From positions 124,001 to 188,000 of IMG/VR virus record IMGVR_UViG_3300046665_000548: DNA of 64,000 nucleotides; one strand, given 5' to 3'. Shown piece by piece: positions 2,915 through 38,892 of the stretch. Both the position numbers and the translations under genes were made by a program. Every line of letters begins with the position of its first letter. The first letter of the stretch is position 1. The notes beneath the pieces were generated by a model. The model made no database searches. It saw only the letters and a program-made list of their open reading frames with translations, and was not told the DNA's origin.

Positions 2915-3883
2915 ATGGCTAATAAGTTTGTAGGCCCGACATTGGCGGCGATCACGATTTTCATGAAGTCAACAAAACTGTTGGCTGTATTGAAATCCGT
3001 CAGCTTCGCCAAGCCTCTGATCACTGTCATATCGATGCTGATCTCGGCCATCGTTTACGGGCTATGGCTCGGACCGTGGTTCGGCATCGGTCTCGTAGGG
3101 ATCATCTTCGTTCACGAGATGGGGCATATCATTGCTTTGCGTCAACGAGGTTATGAGACGCCCGGACCTGTCTTCATCCCGTTTCTCGGCGCGGCTATTT
3201 TCGCCCCGAAATTCGAGGATCGAGACACCGAAGCTTATGTGGCTTTCGGCGGTCCGCTAATCGGGACGCTGTTCGCACTGATCACCTTTATCGCGTGGTA
3301 CGTCACGGGTTCGGAGATTATGATCATGCTGACTTACATTGGTGTGTTCTTAAATCTTTTCAATATGCTTCCAATCAGCCCGCTCGACGGCGGACGAATC
3401 ACACAGGCCGTGGGTTCTTGGTTCAAATGGATCGGCCTCGGTCTGTTATTGGCGTACAGCTTCTTGATGGCGCAGCCGTCTATTCTGCTGATCTGGATTC
3501 TGATCCTTGATAGTTTCGAGAATATGCCACTCCGCGTACGGCCGATCTTGGCGGGATTGATCACTGTTGTGATGGGTGTGTTCATGCTGCTCGGATACGG
3601 CTCTCAGCCACTGTGGGTTAATTGGCTGGATATCTTCCTGGCTTGCTTCTTTGTGTGGATGTTCAACTTTCGCGACAATCAGCGAGTGAAAAATCCAGAG
3701 GAAGAAGAGAAGCCTGACCTCCGACCGGCCGCGACTCCGGCGCAGCGACGGAAATGGCTGGTTTGCTTTATCGGCCTCACTGCCGTGCTTGCAGGTCTGT
3801 TGGTTATCACGGTCGGACATCTTCCTCAGAAGGTGAAGACGGATGCAGCCACGATGGCCGCTCCAACGCCAGAGAAGCAATAA
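2915..3883 (+). CDS. site-2 protease family (M50) membrane metallopeptidase
   Basis: HEMGH zinc motif, GGP, NMLPISPLDGG, multiple TM segments. Confidence 0.9.
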   Translation: MANKFVGPTLAAITIFMKSTKLLAVLKSVSFAKPLITVISMLISAIVYGLWLGPWFGIGLVGIIFVHEMGHIIALRQRGYETPGPVFIPFLGAAIFAPKFEDRDTEAYVAFGGPLIGTLFALITFIAWYVTGSEIMIMLTYIGVFLNLFNMLPISPLDGGRITQAVGSWFKWIGLGLLLAYSFLMAQPSILLIWILILDSFENMPLRVRPILAGLITVVMGVFMLLGYGSQPLWVNWLDIFLACFFVWMFNFRDNQRVKNPEEEEKPDLRPAATPAQRRKWLVCFIGLTAVLAGLLVITVGHLPQKVKTDAATMAAPTPEKQ

Positions 3884-4172
3884 CGCATGTTGCCTGGACA
3901 CCCTTCCCACGGTCTGCCACGACGTTTCGGGTATCTGATGCGTAATTGCGGCCTATCGTATCGCAACTTTTTAGTTGTCACGAGACCGTGGCAAGACTGG
4001 ACCGAGTTGGGGCCGATCAAGAAACGTCTCGGGATCAAGACCAAATACAAGGTGGAGCCTTGGACACCATCAACGACGACAGTTCGTTGGTGGATCGCGC
4101 TAGTATGCGCATTTTTATTTGGACGTTACCTCTAAACTTGACCATTGGGGATGCATCGCTGTAAATAGAGAC

Positions 4173-4211
4173 ATGCGTAACCCTCGAAACCCAATCTTTG
4201 CTGTCGATTGA
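4173..4211 (+). CDS. putative leader peptide MRNPRNPIFAVD
   Basis: ATG 5 nt after TAAATA (4162-4167); its stop lies in a hairpin (4204-4234) abutting the GAGG SD of the next gene. Confidence 0.55.
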   Translation: MRNPRNPIFAVD

Positions 4212-4242
4212 GCGGACTTTCCCGCTTTAATCGAGGTACATC

Positions 4243-4812
4243 TTGTCTAAGAAAGATTGGCGCAATCTGGGCGCTGTAACTGTTTGCGACTACAACAACC
4301 GTCGCTATCAGTTCAACTCTCTTGCCGAAGCTGCTCGTTACTTTGAACGCTACATCCCCGACCTGAAAAAGGGTCACCTGGGATATGAGCAGTTTGAGAC
4401 GCGTCCCTACCGGCGAGTTTTCATCGGCGGCGATAGCCACGTGTTCTACGACGAACTCGGGCTCACCATTCCTGTGTGGAAAGTTCAGGAAGCCTGCCGC
4501 AACCTGCCCTACGAAGCCCGCAGAAGCCGCTGGAGCCGTTTCCCTGATTACGATCATGCCAAGCACTACCGCAACGGTAGCGTGCCTGGAGTGCGTTGTA
4601 GGCGCTGGCATCGCGGCACTGGATCGCCGCGTCTCCACACTCAGTCGGAGATTCGCGAAAATGACTTTGCGAACAACTACGATGAGGACTGCGCGGAATT
4701 CCAAATCAAAACGCGCGGGCGGCGCTCTAAGCTTCCCCACCAGTGGGACGATCCAATGCGCTCGCGGCGCGGCGACGGATGGAAGCAGCACCGCCACAAT
4801 CAGTGGCGGTGA
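4243..4812 (+). CDS. Arg-rich hypothetical protein (TTG start)
   Basis: GAGG SD at 4233; 189 aa; basic C-terminus LPHQWDD...WK...QWR. Confidence 0.65.
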   Translation: MSKKDWRNLGAVTVCDYNNRRYQFNSLAEAARYFERYIPDLKKGHLGYEQFETRPYRRVFIGGDSHVFYDELGLTIPVWKVQEACRNLPYEARRSRWSRFPDYDHAKHYRNGSVPGVRCRRWHRGTGSPRLHTQSEIRENDFANNYDEDCAEFQIKTRGRRSKLPHQWDDPMRSRRGDGWKQHRHNQWR

Positions 4813-5242
4813 CTCAGACTTTTCGGATCATATAGTAGAGGTCCCAGACAAGGACCGAGACTGCGCCATCTTCGTGATCTTCCCACGGCCACGCCTCCTC
4901 ATCTGGAAAGGGCGGAAACGGAAACAGCATCACCGATGGGTCTTTGCGCGCCCAACGCGCAGACGCTTCCATACCGGCATGAAACGCTACCCGTGCTTGG
5001 GCATCAAGGAGAGTGGGAACCTCCGTAAACCCGTTCATCTCTACTAGCGCGTCATTGCAGTGAACAGTGAAACTCATGTGCTCAAATCGATGTCAGGGCG
5101 GACCCGAGTTAGGTATACGAATGCAGTGGCGAAGCCTATTGCCCCCGCCAAGTTATCCACGCGCGGTAGATCAAACATCCAACAAACTGTACCAGCGAGG
5201 GCTAATGCGGCCAAAGCTCCTCCGCATGACAATCTGACCACT

Positions 5243-12639: not shown

Positions 12640-12671
12640 TTGACTTTCGAAACATGGTCTGTGTATAAATA
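12640..12671 (+). promoter_or_regulatory. promoter of tRNA cluster 1 (TTGACT -35 overlapping T4-type late box TATAAATA)
   Basis: TTGACT 12640-12645, TATAAATA 12664-12671. Confidence 0.75.
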
Positions 12672-12674
12672 GAA

Positions 12675-12782
12675 ATGTTCGCGGATGGTCCGCGTCAAAA
12701 GGATTCGATACGTAAGATGTCCAGCTTGTTTAACAAACGCTTTTGGCGGCGCGTGCGCGCTGTCTCGGAGGTCGCAAGCTGA
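12675..12782 (+). CDS. attenuator leader peptide MFADGPRQKDSIRKMSSLFNKRFWRRVRAVSEVAS
   Basis: Codon run TTG TTT AAC AAA CGC TTT TGG CGG CGC GTG CGC matches the downstream tRNAs; 3' end overlaps the antiterminator arm (alternative start ATG at 12717). Confidence 0.75.
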   Translation: MFADGPRQKDSIRKMSSLFNKRFWRRVRAVSEVAS

Positions 12783-12813
12783 TCTGACGCTTTCACGTGT
12801 CATCAGGTTACCG

Positions 12814-12850
12814 AAGCCCTCCGAGGAAAATGATTTCCGGAGGGTTTTTT
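12814..12850 (+). terminator. attenuator terminator T1
   Basis: AAGCCCTCC/GGAGGGTTT stem plus T-tract. Confidence 0.8.
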
Positions 12851-12864
12851 CTTGTCTGCTTTGC

Positions 12865-12906
12865 AGAGCCCTCCCTGGAAAATCCTCGGAGGGCTTTTGT
12901 TGTTTT
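12865..12906 (+). terminator. attenuator terminator T2 (duplicate of T1)
   Basis: AGAGCCCTCC/GGAGGGCTTT stem plus TGTTGTTTT. Confidence 0.8.
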
Positions 12907-12939: not shown

Positions 12940-13015
12940 GCTTCTGTAGCTCAGTTGGTAGAGCACTCGACTGAAAATCGGGGTGTCGGCGGTTCGAGCC
13001 CGCCTGGAAGCACCA
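12940..13015 (+). tRNA. tRNA-Phe(GAA)
   Basis: Cloverleaf, loop CT-GAA-AA, encoded CCA. Confidence 0.95.
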
Positions 13016-13031
13016 ATTCAATGCTGGTCAC

Positions 13032-13115
13032 GCGGGCGTGGCGGAATGGTTTAGACGCGCTGGCTTCAAACCCCAGTTCTTCGGAGTGGGGGTTCAAGTC
13101 CCTCCGCCCGCACCA
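13032..13115 (+). tRNA. tRNA-Leu(CAA)
   Basis: Class II, loop TT-CAA-AC, C31-C39 mismatch, A73, CCA. Confidence 0.85.
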
Positions 13116-13130
13116 GCATATACCAAGTTT

Positions 13131-13206
13131 AAGGGTGTAGCTCAATTGGTAGAGCGTCGGTCTCCAAAACCGAAGGTTGCAGGTTCGATGCCTGTCGCCC
13201 TTGCCA
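13131..13206 (+). tRNA. tRNA-Trp(CCA)
   Basis: Loop CT-CCA-AA, G73, CCA. Confidence 0.95.
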
Positions 13207-13207
13207 C

Positions 13208-13284
13208 GGTCTTATAGCTCAACTGGATAGAGCACCTGACTACGAATCAGGAGGTTTCAGGTTCGAGTCCTGATAAGACCGCCA
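13208..13284 (+). tRNA. tRNA-Arg(ACG)
   Basis: Loop CT-ACG-AA, A20, CCA. Confidence 0.95.
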
Positions 13285-13330
13285 CCTTATAGTCCACTTG
13301 GGCGCATCCACGGGGTGCTCTAGGCCGACT

Positions 13331-13405
13331 GGTCCGTTAGCGCAGCGGTAGCGCATTCGCCTTCGAAGCGACTGGTCGGCGGTTCGAATCCGTCACGGAC
13401 CTCCA
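13331..13405 (+). tRNA. tRNA-Arg(TCG), atypical identity elements
   Basis: Loop CT-TCG-AA, U73, no A20, CCA. Confidence 0.85.
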
Positions 13406-13448
13406 AATACGTGAAGGCTACGATAGTGCCAGCGAGACGATTTTTGAT

Positions 13449-13524
13449 GGGCGTATAACTCAGTTGGTAGAGTAGCTGACTCTTAATCAGTTTGTCGCAG
13501 GTTCGAACCCTGCTGCGCCCACCA
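13449..13524 (+). tRNA. tRNA-Lys(CTT)
   Basis: Loop CT-CTT-AA, A73, CCA. Confidence 0.95.
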
Positions 13525-13535
13525 AAAATCGTTTT

Positions 13536-13622
13536 GAGCCGGTGTCCCGAGTGGCGAAGGGGGCGGACTTTTAATCCGTTGTTGAGAGACCATCGTGGGT
13601 TCGAGTCCCACCCGGCTCCCCA
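13536..13622 (+). tRNA. tRNA with TTT (Lys) anticodon in a class II, Tyr-like body
   Basis: GAGCCGG/CCGGCTC acceptor, loop CT-TTT-AA, 15-nt variable region, C73, CCA. Confidence 0.8.
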
Positions 13623-25066: not shown

Positions 25067-25098
25067 TTGACATCGAAATAACACCTGTGTGATAAATA
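25067..25098 (+). promoter_or_regulatory. promoter of tRNA cluster 2
   Basis: TTGACA 25067-25072 and TAAATA 25093-25098. Confidence 0.75.
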
Positions 25099-25103
25099 AA
25101 ACC

Positions 25104-25178
25104 ATGAACAAGAATGTCACAACAACCGTCGTTATTATTACGACCGTACGAAGCGGGAGCTTCGAACGAACGATGTGA
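25104..25178 (+). CDS. attenuator leader peptide MNKNVTTTVVIITTVRSGSFERTM
   Basis: 11 consecutive Thr/Val/Ile codons; the 3' half forms the antiterminator 5' arm. Confidence 0.9.
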   Translation: MNKNVTTTVVIITTVRSGSFERTM

Positions 25179-25202
25179 CGCGAGTTCATCAGTTCAGTTT
25201 CG

Positions 25203-25233
25203 AAACTCCCAGGGAAACCTCGGGAGTTTTTTT
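25203..25233 (+). terminator. attenuator terminator directly before tRNA-Ile
   Basis: AAACTCCC-AGG-GAAA-CCT-C-GGGAG-TTTTTTT. Confidence 0.85.
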
Positions 25234-25308
25234 GTGCTTGTAGCTCAGTGGTAGAGCGCTCGGCTGATAACCGAGAGGTCGGAGGTTCGAGCCCTCCCAG
25301 GCACACCA
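25234..25308 (+). tRNA. tRNA-Ile(GAT)
   Basis: Loop CT-GAT-AA, CCA. Confidence 0.95.
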
Positions 25309-25325
25309 CATTTTTTGGAGGGAAG

Positions 25326-25523
25326 ATGAAGATCAGCGCGTTAGAACTACGACTCGCTGAGGCGAGAGAACGATTTGGTGATCTAGATGTCTACGTTGGA
25401 GAGGCAAGCTCTCAGCTTCGATCTCGTATCGACGTGAACGTGGATAGCGCCATCGCCAAAGGCGAAGACGAAACGGGTGAACGAAAAATCTGCATCGTCC
25501 AGGCTTATGTCATTTTCTCCTGA
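25326..25523 (+). CDS. small hypothetical protein within the tRNA cluster
   Basis: GGAGG SD, 65 aa. Confidence 0.6.
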   Translation: MKISALELRLAEARERFGDLDVYVGEASSQLRSRIDVNVDSAIAKGEDETGERKICIVQAYVIFS

Positions 25524-25547
25524 CTAAATTATTGAGTGAAATGGAAT

Positions 25548-25622
25548 GCTGGTGTAGCACAGCGGTAGTGCAGTCGCTTCGTAAGCGAAAGGTCGGGAGT
25601 TCAATCCTCTCCACCAGCACCA
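25548..25622 (+). tRNA. tRNA-Thr(CGT)
   Basis: Loop TT-CGT-AA, CCA. Confidence 0.93.
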
Positions 25623-25632
25623 TTTTCTCAAC

Positions 25633-25707
25633 GCCGGTTTAGCTCAGCGGTAGAGCAGCGGTTTTGTAAACCGAAGGTCGGGAGTTCAATCCTCTCAACC
25701 GGCACCA
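25633..25707 (+). tRNA. tRNA-Thr(TGT)
   Basis: Loop TT-TGT-AA, CCA. Confidence 0.93.
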
Positions 25708-25715
25708 CACGTTTA

Positions 25716-25790
25716 GCTGACTTAGCACAGTGGTAGTGCACCTCATTGGTAATGAGGAGGTCGCCGGTTCGAACCCGGCAGTCAGCACCA
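25716..25790 (+). tRNA. tRNA-Thr(GGT)
   Basis: Loop TT-GGT-AA, CCA. Confidence 0.95.
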
Positions 25791-25791
25791 C

Positions 25792-25866
25792 GGGAACATA
25801 GCTCAGCGGTAGAGCGTCTGCTCGACATGCAGAATGTCCAAGGTTCGATTCCTTGTGTTCCCACCA
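25792..25866 (+). tRNA. tRNA-Val(GAC) with C33
   Basis: Loop TC-GAC-AT, CCA. Confidence 0.9.
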
Positions 25867-38371: not shown

Positions 38372-38652
38372 TGTTGGACAAGGACGAGGCGTCGCTTCTA
38401 AATTCAATCTACACGCGGTCTATGGAGCAGGGTCGTGAGTGGTTTCCTTGCATCTGCAAAAAACAAGCGAGAATGGATGCGAGCGTACGGCTTATCAAAG
38501 CCGGGTTAATTGCTGTCGGAGAACGCGAGCCGCACCATCAGAGACTTCCACATTATTGGAGGATTCTCGGCCTCACCGAACAGGGAAAATTTATCGCCAA
38601 ACTATCTGGTTTCGATCTAGACATTTCAGACGAAGATTGGTAAATAACAACG

Positions 38653-38697
38653 ATGAATTCCACTCTCACCTACTTTGAGGCGATACGCACGCTCTAA
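38653..38697 (+). CDS. putative leader peptide MNSTLTYFEAIRTL with an ATA codon
   Basis: TAAATA 6 nt upstream; ATA at 38683; hairpin and two AUA-type tRNAs directly downstream. Confidence 0.6.
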   Translation: MNSTLTYFEAIRTL

Positions 38698-38714
38698 CCC
38701 CGAAAGGGGCTTTT

Positions 38715-38806
38715 GGGCGTGACCTTAGGTAGGGCGAGGGATTTATATCCCCTTTCAGGCGGTAGATGACCGTTCGGCTGTTGAGGTTCGAATCCTCCCG
38801 CGCTCA
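38715..38806 (+). tRNA. atypical tRNA-Ile(TAT) with long variable arm
   Basis: GGGCGTG/CGCGCTC acceptor, loop TT-TAT-AT, GGTTCGAATCC T-loop; reduced D-arm, ends ACTA rather than ACCA. Confidence 0.65.
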
Positions 38807-38817
38807 CTACATTTTTC

Positions 38818-38892
38818 GGGGGTGTAGCTCAATGGTAGAGCCGTTCACTCATAATGGACCGGTCGCTGGTTCGATTCCAGCCGCCCCCACCA
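38818..38892 (+). tRNA. tRNA(CAT), most likely Ile2 (lysidine type)
   Basis: Loop CT-CAT-AA; CTCATAAT...GGTCGCTGGTTC resembles E. coli Ile2; paired 1-72, so not an initiator. Confidence 0.85.

What the first reader, a model, noticed from the sequence alone, without database searches (positions are those of the whole stretch)
4138..4812. MRNPRNPIFAVD leader with alternative pairings over the RBS of an Arg-rich gene
Seen: a 12-codon leaderless ORF. Hairpin TCGATTGAGCGG/CCGCTTTAATCGA (4204-4234) spans its TGA and touches the GAGG SD. Leader segment CCTCGA (4182-4187) is complementary to TCGAGG (SD, 4231-4236), and CCAATCTTT (4191-4199) to AAAGATTGG (4252-4260) in the first codons of the TTG-start gene. 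Inference: a translational attenuator. The signal is unknown (Arg-CGA or Pro decoding, RF2 termination, or drug-dependent stalling, since IFAV/VD loosely recalls erm leaders). It implicates the uncharacterised basic protein in a translation-stress response.
Basis: partly seen in the sequence, partly recalled or inferred. Interest (0 to 1): 0.6.

Follow-up and report, generated by a model that had tools for sequence, protein, structure and literature searches.

The report
Conserved leader ORF gating a phage gene
A 12-codon leader ORF ends inside a hairpin that hides the ribosome-binding site of an unknown basic gene in a 608-kb phage, and every relative examined keeps this design, so ribosomes on the leader probably control how much of the protein is made.

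Summary
The window is part of a 607,744-bp phage record. The 12-codon ORF (4173-4211) sits 5 nt after a conserved promoter-like TTGACC-N18-TAAATA. Its last codons and its stop form the 5' arm of a hairpin (4199-4238, about -17 kcal/mol). That hairpin pairs the GAGG Shine-Dalgarno (SD) of a TTG-start 189-aa gene.

All 15 informative homologous loci (down to 29% protein identity) have an 8-12 codon upstream ORF whose stop lies in the 5' arm of an SD-masking hairpin. Only 3.7% of control gene starts in this genome show this.

One leader class, [RK]N[PV][IL]F[AI][VI]D-stop, is kept while the main protein drops to 43-48% identity. All third codon positions vary and the hairpin changes by compensation, so the leader is translated and its sequence is selected.

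Best reading: ribosome occupancy at the leader's end unmasks the SD, by coupling or attenuation. A peptide-dependent pause is possible. The inducing signal and the protein's function remain unknown.

In passing: the same promoter-plus-leaderless-ORF design precedes seven tRNA clusters in this phage. Each leader is enriched in the amino acids of the tRNAs downstream.

The parts
4138..4143 (+). -35-like box TTGACC
   Evidence: Invariant TTGAC in window, L004 and L005, while the 18-nt spacer has diverged completely. The same box heads 7 other leaderless short ORFs in the genome.
4160..4167 (+). -10-like box TGTAAATA (TAAATA at 4162-4167), 5 nt before the leader ATG
   Evidence: Conserved in L004 and L005. 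(TA)TAAATA followed by 3-7 nt and then ATG recurs at 8 sites in the genome. The consensus scan did not flag it, because its rule needs T at position 6 of the hexamer.
4173..4211 (+). Leader ORF: 12 sense codons plus TGA, no room for an SD, probably leaderless
   Evidence: Orthologous leader ORFs occur in L005, L004, L007 and L008 with variable third codon positions.
4185..4208 (+). Conserved core of the leader peptide (R N P I F A V D)
   Evidence: 5-7 of 8 residues are shared with L004, L005 and L007, although the L007 main protein is only 45% identical. Variable columns by codon position are 5/3/8 of 8.
4176..4193 (+). Window-specific tandem RNP-RNP codon repeat. It holds CCTCGA (4182-4187), a second anti-SD.
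   Evidence: Absent from L004, L005, L007 and L008. It pairs with TCGAGG in some folds of the window RNA.
4199..4238 (+). SD-sequestering hairpin: 5' arm 4199-4215 (leader codons 10-12 and the stop), loop 4216-4221, 3' arm 4222-4238
   Evidence: Folds (-14.5 to -17.6 kcal/mol). Conserved in L004 and L005. Replaced by different but equivalent hairpins in 12 other loci.
4233..4236 (+). Shine-Dalgarno GAGG of the main gene, inside the 3' arm, 6 nt before TTG
   Evidence: It becomes unpaired when a ribosome footprint is placed on leader codon 8.
4243..4812 (+). Main gene: TTG start, 189 aa, basic, function unknown
   Evidence: N-termini of homologues align at this start. The family has 204 clusters at E <= 0.001. 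No Pfam match and only a weak PHROG match. The model has pLDDT 81 and no convincing fold match.
4252..4260 (+). AAAGATTGG, the partner of CCAATCTTT (4191-4199) in a 9-bp long-range pairing
   Evidence: Present in the window's minimum-free-energy fold. L005 has a different register and L004 has none. Treated as not conserved.

Best explanation
This is a leader-ORF translational gate.

Transcription probably starts at or within a nucleotide or so of the leader AUG, so 70S ribosomes load directly on the 5' end and translate the 12-codon leader. On a ribosome-free RNA, the last three leader codons and the stop codon pair with the SD of the main gene in a stable hairpin, so independent initiation at the weak TTG start is blocked.

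A ribosome occupying the end of the leader (roughly codons 7-12 and the stop) holds the 5' arm in its channel and leaves the SD single-stranded just beyond its leading edge. The main gene is then translated in one of two ways: the terminating ribosome reinitiates, or a new 30S subunit binds before the hairpin refolds. Output therefore depends on how often, and for how long, ribosomes sit at the leader's end.

In this lineage the leader peptide (core RNPIF-A/I-V/I-D) is itself conserved. I read that as tuning ribosome dwell time (a nascent-peptide-dependent pause or slow termination). The trigger is unknown.

Shown: the anatomy, its conservation, the coding-type selection on the leader, and SD exposure under modelled ribosome footprints.
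Inferred: the transcription start, dependence of main-gene translation on leader translation, any pause, and the biological signal.
For: - Anatomy at the stated coordinates.
- The promoter boxes, leader ORF, hairpin, SD and TTG are conserved in L004 and L005, against a fully diverged promoter spacer.
- All 15 informative homologous loci, down to 29% protein identity, carry an 8-12 codon upstream ORF whose stop lies in the 5' arm of a hairpin (-11 to -24 kcal/mol) whose 3' arm overlaps the SD. The stop-to-start gap is 21-33 nt.
- A fixed test (upstream ORF plus at least 8 pairs between its 3' end and the SD zone) is met by 13 of 14 family loci. It is met by only 20 of 536 SD-bearing ORF starts in this genome.
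- Outside this lineage the upstream ORFs have their own well-spaced SD in 8 of 11 cases. Examples are GGAGG in L008 and GGGAGGGG in L006.
- Leader residues are 7 of 8 identical between L004 and L007, whose main proteins are 43% identical. There are five synonymous changes and a different, compensating 3' arm. Third codon positions vary in 8 of 8 core codons, against 5 and 3 for positions 1 and 2.
- Placing a ribosome footprint on leader codon 8 frees the SD in the fold.
- The same promoter-plus-leaderless-ORF layout is used at 7 tRNA attenuator-like sites in this genome, so ribosome-sensing leaders are a habit of this phage.
- Both coupling by RNA unfolding and coupling by reinitiation are established mechanisms (PMC12548453). 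Leaderless short ORFs whose stalled ribosomes block RBS-sequestering structures are known in mycobacteria (bioRxiv 10.1101/834739).
Against: - There is no transcript, ribosome-profiling or reporter data. No RNA run holds the locus.
- The start of transcription at the AUG rests on promoter geometry only.
- The second leader class shows little peptide conservation beyond codons that are themselves the anti-SD (UUC C..). A peptide-specific pause therefore cannot be the family-wide mechanism.
- In loci with a 21-24 nt gap, a second 30S would clash with a terminating ribosome. Which initiation route is used is open.
- In the window, the extra CCTCGA can re-pair with the SD when the modelled ribosome sits at the stop. 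This complicates the simple picture.
Confidence: 0.6

Rival explanations
1. Constitutive dose-limiting coupling. The leader and hairpin simply ensure that the main gene is made only at a low fixed ratio, by termination-reinitiation. No signal is sensed, and the peptide has no role of its own beyond being translatable.
For: - The architecture is universal while peptides differ between classes.
- The start is the weak TTG in the window, L004 and L005.
- Gaps of 21-33 nt suit reinitiation (PMC12548453).
- Very stable hairpins would block free initiation.
Against: It does not explain why the N-P-I-F codons are held at the amino-acid level across 43-48% main-protein identity, with all third positions free. 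These codons lie outside the hairpin in the window group.
Confidence: 0.25
2. An aminoacyl-tRNA supply sensor, like the sibling tRNA leaders. Slow decoding of leader codons during tRNA or amino-acid shortage holds the ribosome over the 5' arm and induces the gene.
For: - Seven leaders with the same promoter in this genome are enriched in residues cognate to the tRNAs they precede. The observed pairing is the single best of 5040 permutations.
- Conservation of amino-acid identity with free third positions fits sensing by amino acid.
Against: - The core holds eight mostly different residues, with no run of one kind.
- No tRNA gene follows.
- L008 replaces Pro-Ile with Val-Leu.
Confidence: 0.08
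3. The hairpin is an operator bound by a protein, for example the basic gene product itself (autogenous repression). The upstream ORF is secondary.
For: The product is basic (pI 9.85) with an Arg-rich, partly disordered C-terminal half. Translational operators over an SD are common in phages (established knowledge of T4 RegA and gp32).
Against: Loop and stem sequences are not conserved between lineages. What is conserved is the position of the stop codon and the upstream ORF. An operator model does not need either.
Confidence: 0.05
4. A chance short ORF and chance hairpin with no function.
For: Short ORFs are the default in random sequence. The promoter scan did not flag the site.
Against: 15 of 15 loci against a 3.7% background, the coding-type substitution pattern, and conserved boxes flanking a diverged spacer.
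Confidence: 0.01

Closest known systems
Inducible erm/cat leader-peptide translational attenuators (ermC type)
   Same: A short leader ORF, with the SD of the downstream gene held in a hairpin that a ribosome on the leader can open. The leader is about 10 residues long, and its core [IL]F[AI][VI] has the form of the erm IFVI stalling motif (PMC11721399).
   Different: - A single hairpin, not a four-segment switch.
- The leader's own stop codon lies in the 5' arm.
- No inducer is known.
- The controlled gene is an unknown phage protein, not a resistance gene.
- It is conserved across a phage protein family with two unrelated leader classes.
Leaderless polycysteine short ORFs of mycobacteria (the 'ribulon'; bioRxiv 10.1101/834739)
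   Same: A leaderless short ORF as the first cistron. Ribosomes held on it block a structure that sequesters the RBS of the next gene. Several such leaders in one genome give a collective ribosome-directed response.
   Different: There is no run of one sensed codon in this leader. The host is a phage. Its sibling leaders act on tRNA genes through terminators rather than on an RBS.
Translational coupling by RNA unfolding or reinitiation (review PMC12548453), and 5'-terminal uAUG ORFs of E. coli (PMC4965119)
   Same: Translation of an upstream ORF that ends close to the next start opens inhibitory structure or hands on the ribosome. 5'-terminal AUGs bind 70S ribosomes and can affect the downstream cistron.
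   Different: The upstream partner here is a dedicated 8-12 codon ORF rather than a real gene. Its peptide is conserved in one class, which plain coupling does not require.
Arrest peptides that expose a downstream SD (SecM-secA, MifM-yidC2)
   Same: A ribosome paused near the end of an upstream ORF melts a stem that contains the SD of the next gene (established knowledge).
   Different: Those peptides are long and sense secretion or membrane insertion. Here the whole peptide is 9-12 residues, and no arrest has been shown.
Phage T4 gene 60 translational bypass
   Same: A stop codon (mostly UAG) inside a stem-loop, an SD-like element downstream, a nascent peptide that matters, and a phage setting (established knowledge).
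   Different: Matched take-off and landing codons exist only in the window and L005 (GAT at 4206 and 4255). They are absent in L004, L007 and L008. Every main gene has its own SD and start codon aligned with the family N-terminus.
trp/his/thr-type leader-peptide transcription attenuators
   Same: The sibling elements in this genome fit this type: a leader rich in the sensed residues, an antiterminator, and a terminator with a T-run.
   Different: The finding itself has no terminator and no cognate codon run.

Membership tests
Leader-ORF translational attenuator (erm/cat type) | A short translated ORF upstream of the regulated gene | tested here: met
   Comparative evidence only: the ORF is conserved, third codon positions vary in 8 of 8 core codons, and the upstream ORFs of other lineages have their own SD. 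There is no direct translation data.
Leader-ORF translational attenuator (erm/cat type) | The SD of the regulated gene is sequestered in a hairpin that a ribosome on the leader can open | tested here: met
   Hairpin 4199-4238 contains GAGG. A modelled footprint on codon 8 frees it. Equivalent hairpins occur in 15 of 15 loci.
Leader-ORF translational attenuator (erm/cat type) | Conserved mutually exclusive alternative helices (segments 1:2/3:4 versus 2:3) | tested here: not met
Leader-ORF translational attenuator (erm/cat type) | Inducer-dependent programmed stall at a defined leader codon | not testable with these tools
   Needs toeprinting or reporters. There is only a motif resemblance ([IL]F[AI][VI] versus IFVI, PMC11721399).
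Translational coupling (unfolding or reinitiation) | The upstream ORF ends close to the downstream start and overlaps an inhibitory structure at its RBS | tested here: met
   Gap of 21-33 nt, and the stop codon is paired within the SD-masking stem in all loci.
Translational coupling (unfolding or reinitiation) | Downstream translation depends on upstream translation | not testable with these tools
   Requires start-codon and early-stop mutants in a reporter.
Leaderless mRNA / 5'-terminal uAUG | Transcript 5' end at, or within a nucleotide or so of, the AUG, with no SD before it | tested here: inconclusive
   The -10-like box ends 5 nt before the ATG and leaves no room for an SD. The same geometry occurs at 8 sites in the genome. 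No 5'-end data exist.
Leader-peptide transcription attenuator (trp type) | An intrinsic terminator between the leader and the regulated gene | tested here: not met
   No T-run follows the hairpin and no terminator call falls at 4199-4242. The seven sibling leaders do have one.
Leader-peptide transcription attenuator (trp type) | A run of codons for the sensed amino acid | tested here: not met
   The core is R N P I F A V D, and the repeated RNP is window-only.
Ribosome arrest peptide | A conserved C-terminal peptide segment acting in the exit tunnel | tested here: inconclusive
   Conservation is met for class 1 but not for class 2. Arrest itself is untested.
T4 gene 60-type bypass | Matched take-off and landing codons flanking the gap | tested here: not met
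   Present in the window and L005 only. The main genes have their own SD and start.

The most novel reading that the evidence does not exclude
The class-1 leader ([RK]NP-IF-[AI][VI]-D-stop) is a true sensing arrest peptide. It would resemble the IFVI erm leaders, but act at or next to its stop codon inside the SD-masking hairpin. It would make a widespread phage gene inducible by a tunnel-binding small molecule, or by impaired termination or elongation in the infected cell. Together with at least seven leader-controlled tRNA clusters that share its promoter, it would form a phage-encoded 'ribulon': a set of ribosome-read sensors through which a 608-kb phage monitors and repairs the host's translation capacity.
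Probability: 0.2. Interest if true: 0.85.

Novelty: new variant of a known kind. Interest (0 to 1): 0.7.

Why it matters
- A single regulatory design (a short ORF that stops inside the hairpin masking the next gene's SD) has been kept in front of one phage protein family through almost complete sequence turnover. That marks the unknown protein as something whose dose or timing must follow ribosome behaviour. It also gives a compact, testable module of about 70 nt.
- The conserved 8-residue leader is a candidate new short regulatory nascent peptide.
- The element belongs to a genome-wide set of leaderless leader ORFs. The others appear to switch phage tRNA clusters on when the matching tRNAs run short. 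I found no description of leader-peptide control of phage tRNA genes in the searchable literature.
- If confirmed, this would show that very large phages do not just carry tRNAs but regulate them by sensing translation. Cultured relatives (CcrColossus, CcrPW, Phosso, vB_OspM_OC) carry the upstream-ORF module, so experiments are possible.

Tried and rejected
1. Rfam found only tRNAs in the window and nothing at the locus.
2. The consensus promoter/terminator scan did not flag the promoter and found no terminator after the hairpin.
3. The protein's function stays open. There is no Pfam hit for it or for 60 relatives, one weak PHROG of unknown function, and no PDB sequence match. The best structural matches are Z 5.2 (ERH) and Z 3.1 (I-HmuI DNA-binding part), below the noise level quoted by the tool. 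The Atlas model was too poor to use.
4. Relatives were sought in IMG/VR by single protein, by profile and by hairpin pattern, and none was found. The metagenome scan gave one locus. Most loci came from exact-protein look-ups. One had no DNA (P0004) and one was cut at the contig end (L015).
5. The class-1 leader pattern was scanned in viral and prokaryote genome collections. It gave 0 and 2 hits. Both hits are chance: one lies inside a 1283-codon ORF on the other strand and neither has a homologue nearby.
6. Gene 60-like bypass, readthrough and frameshift fusion were rejected. Matched codons are not conserved, the gap frame varies, and downstream in-frame stops are present.
7. Recoding of TAG was rejected. 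TAG ends 19% of long frames evenly along the genome.
8. Sequencing runs gave only two DNA runs holding under 10% of the words and no RNA.
9. The records behind L004 and L005 are not held, so their tRNA leaders could not be checked.
10. Phosso's tRNA region shows no cognate leaders.
11. Equilibrium folding of the full tRNA leaders keeps the terminator. Only folding of the nascent RNA showed the antiterminator.

Full report
**Setting.** The window is bases 124001-188000 of a single 607,744-bp virus record. It has 52% G+C and 57 tRNA genes. The region of the finding holds one rightward gene, 4243-4812. An M50-peptidase-like gene (2915-3883) lies upstream, and a convergent leftward ORF ends at 4814.

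**Observation.**
- TTGACC lies at 4138-4143 and TAAATA at 4162-4167.
- Five bases later an ATG opens a 12-codon ORF that ends with TGA at 4209-4211.
- The arms 4204-4215 and 4222-4234 pair. Folding extends the helix to 4199-4238, so the whole GAGG (4233-4236) is paired, at -14.5 to -17.6 kcal/mol.
- The main gene starts with TTG at 4243, six bases after the SD.
- The product has 28 Arg in 189 residues and a pI of 9.85.

**Close relatives.** Two metagenomic relatives (77% and 72% protein identity; L004 and L005) align through the upstream region.
- The two promoter boxes, the leader ORF, the hairpin, the SD and the TTG start are conserved. The 18 bases between the boxes share essentially nothing, so neutral sites are saturated.
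- Their leaders read MTKNPIFIID and MTRNPIFAID, ending in TAG.
- So the CGA codon, the TGA stop and the CCTCGA anti-SD are private to this window. The 9-bp long-range pairing is replaced by a shorter one in another register in L005, and is missing in L004.

**The wider family.**
- An exhaustive profile-free search found 204 clusters of relatives, most about 190 residues long.
- I recovered DNA for 13 further loci, plus four cultured phages: CcrColossus, CcrPW, vB_OspM_OC and Phosso.
- One locus is cut at the contig end. In each of the other 15 there is an 8-12 codon upstream ORF whose stop codon is base-paired in the 5' arm of a hairpin of -11 to -24 kcal/mol. The 3' arm of that hairpin overlaps the SD of the main gene, and the gap from stop to start is 21-33 nt. 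This holds down to 29% protein identity (L017).
- With a fixed computational criterion, 13 of 14 family loci pass, against 20 of 536 SD-bearing ORF starts of this genome. The window itself scores low on that test only because its private CCTCGA competes in the fold.
- Outside the window's lineage the upstream ORFs have their own SD at proper spacing in 8 of 11 cases. That is independent evidence that they are translated.

**Two leader classes.**
- Class 1 (window, L005, L004, L007, L008) ends [RK]N[PV][IL]F[AI][VI]D-stop. L004 and L007 share 7 of the last 8 leader residues although their main proteins are 43% identical. They differ by five synonymous changes, and the 3' arm of the hairpin has changed to match the altered codons. 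Across the five leaders, all eight third codon positions vary, against five first and three second positions.
- In the window group the N-P-I-F codons lie outside the hairpin, so RNA pairing does not explain their conservation.
- Class 2 leaders are unrelated in sequence and mostly end (G)F[R/H/D]-stop. There the UUC C.. codons are themselves the anti-SD, so RNA and peptide constraints cannot be separated.
- The stop is TAG in 10, TAA in 4 and TGA in 1 of 15 loci. The next base is G in 12.

**Mechanism.**
- A hairpin this stable over an SD should prevent free initiation (established knowledge on SD masking). The weak TTG start adds to that.
- When a 27-nt footprint is placed with leader codon 8 in the P site, the SD becomes unpaired in the fold. 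With the ribosome on codon 3 the hairpin stays closed.
- A ribosome at the stop holds the whole 5' arm, and the SD lies just past its leading edge.
- I therefore read the element as a gate: ribosome occupancy at the leader's end opens the SD. Initiation follows either by reinitiation of the same ribosome or by a new 30S subunit. These are the two accepted models of coupling (PMC12548453).
- In loci with gaps of 21-24 nt a second subunit would clash with the terminating ribosome, which favours reinitiation there.
- The conserved class-1 peptide suggests that dwell time at the end of the leader is tuned by the nascent chain. Its core has the form of the IFVI stalling motif of erm leaders (PMC11721399), and its length matches drug-sensing leaders. 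This is resemblance only.
- The closest described system in logic is the set of leaderless polycysteine ORFs of mycobacteria, where stalled ribosomes block RBS-sequestering structure (bioRxiv 10.1101/834739). E. coli 5'-terminal uAUG ORFs show that such starts bind 70S ribosomes (PMC4965119).

**Genome context that bears on the reading.**
- The motif TTGAC, 17-22 bases, TAAATA, 3-8 bases, ATG occurs eight times in the genome, where about 0.2 is expected from base counts (my estimate). Each time it is followed by a short ORF.
- Seven of these precede tRNA clusters, and each leader is enriched in exactly the amino acids of the tRNAs downstream. Of 5040 ways of pairing leaders with clusters, the observed one is the unique maximum: 61 cognate residues against a mean of 21.
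- All seven have G+C-rich hairpins with T-runs before the first tRNA.
- For the Ile/Thr/Val leader (window 25104-25178), the nascent RNA folds into a -25 kcal/mol antiterminator that uses the terminator's CTCCC. It forms whenever the ribosome is on codons 9-13. A ribosome at the stop disrupts it and leaves the -17 kcal/mol terminator free to form.
- An eighth tRNA cluster (Tyr, Pro, Leu, Met, Cys) has an SD-led leader containing LYPMPCYP.
- The finding is thus the one member of this promoter-leader set that controls a protein gene, and it does so at the level of translation. Phosso shows no such tRNA leaders.

**The protein.**
- The model is confident for an N-terminal alpha/beta domain (residues 1-92) and for helices at 134-162. 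The Arg-rich stretches are poorly ordered.
- No fold or family match is convincing.
- Neighbours vary. In L007 a tRNA lies directly upstream, in L011 a CCA-adding-type enzyme lies nearby, and other loci have DNA polymerase fragments or gp32. Function stays unknown.

**Verdict.** The general interpretation (a leader-ORF translational control element) is supported. The particular signals and alternative pairings are not. It is a new variant of a known kind. The peptide's role, the inducing condition and the protein's function all need experiments.

Noticed in passing
window 25067-25233 (leader ORF 25104-25178), ahead of tRNAs at 25234-25866: A leaderless 24-codon leader with a TTTVVIITTV run follows the same TTGAC/TAAATA promoter. 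It is followed by an antiterminator (-25 kcal/mol), then a terminator with a T7 run that abuts tRNA-Ile, three tRNA-Thr and tRNA-Val. This looks like trp-type attenuation of phage tRNA genes by their own cognate codons.
   Followed up: yes
window 12640-12906 (leader ORF 12675-12782), ahead of tRNAs at 12940-13622 and 14221: A 35-codon leaderless leader whose second half is rich in Phe, Lys, Arg, Trp and Val. Two tandem terminators follow (stems near 12816-12844 and 12867-12895, each with a T-run). Then come tRNA Phe, Leu, Trp, Arg, Arg, Lys, Lys and later Val.
   Followed up: partly
G000 outside the window: leader ATGs at genome 343196, 523723, 259639(-), 253282(-), 238115(-); SD-led leader 209 nt upstream of the cluster ending at 231678(-): Asn-, Asp/Glu-, Ser-, Leu/Gln- and His-rich leaders precede tRNA-Asn x2, Asp+Glu x3, Ser x4, Gln/Leu x7 and His, each with a terminator. 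A Tyr/Pro/Met/Cys-rich leader precedes the Tyr-Pro-Leu-Met-Cys cluster. Leader-to-cluster matching is the best of 5040 permutations. I found no paper describing leader-peptide control of phage tRNA genes. It was not seen in phage Phosso.
   Followed up: partly
window 38640-38830: Another TAAATA-proximal short ORF (38654-38698, 14 codons) runs straight into a small terminator-like hairpin. It lies ahead of a sequence with a tRNA-like 3' end (about 38786-38810) that neither ARAGORN nor Rfam calls, and ahead of tRNA-Met at 38818. The leader shows no cognate enrichment.
   Followed up: no
G000 genome 4091-4256 (outside the window): Two adjacent tRNA genes with anticodon CUA (amber-suppressor type; ARAGORN labels them Pyl), plus a tRNA with a four-base anticodon call at 1944-2020. 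TAG still ends 19% of long frames, so there is no sign of recoding. This phage's leader ORF uses TGA where relatives use TAG.
   Followed up: partly
window 4243-4812 and relatives: The 189-aa protein belongs to an unnamed family of at least 204 clusters, with invariant or near-invariant Trp, Arg, Asp and Lys positions. It has no Pfam model. It occurs in cultured phages of Caulobacter, Ochrobactrum and Sinorhizobium. There is a weak, repeated hint of a homing-endonuclease-type DNA-binding module in the N-terminal domain.
   Followed up: partly
L007 100-186; L011 1570-2276: In L007 a tRNA gene ends about 34 nt before the leader ORF. In L011 a CCA-adding/poly(A) polymerase family gene lies two genes downstream. 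This is a possible but inconsistent link of the family to tRNA biology.
   Followed up: no
window 2915-3883 versus L004 695-2880: The M50-peptidase-like membrane protein upstream is syntenic in L004. There, a 406-aa radical SAM gene on the opposite strand is inserted between it and the leader.
   Followed up: no
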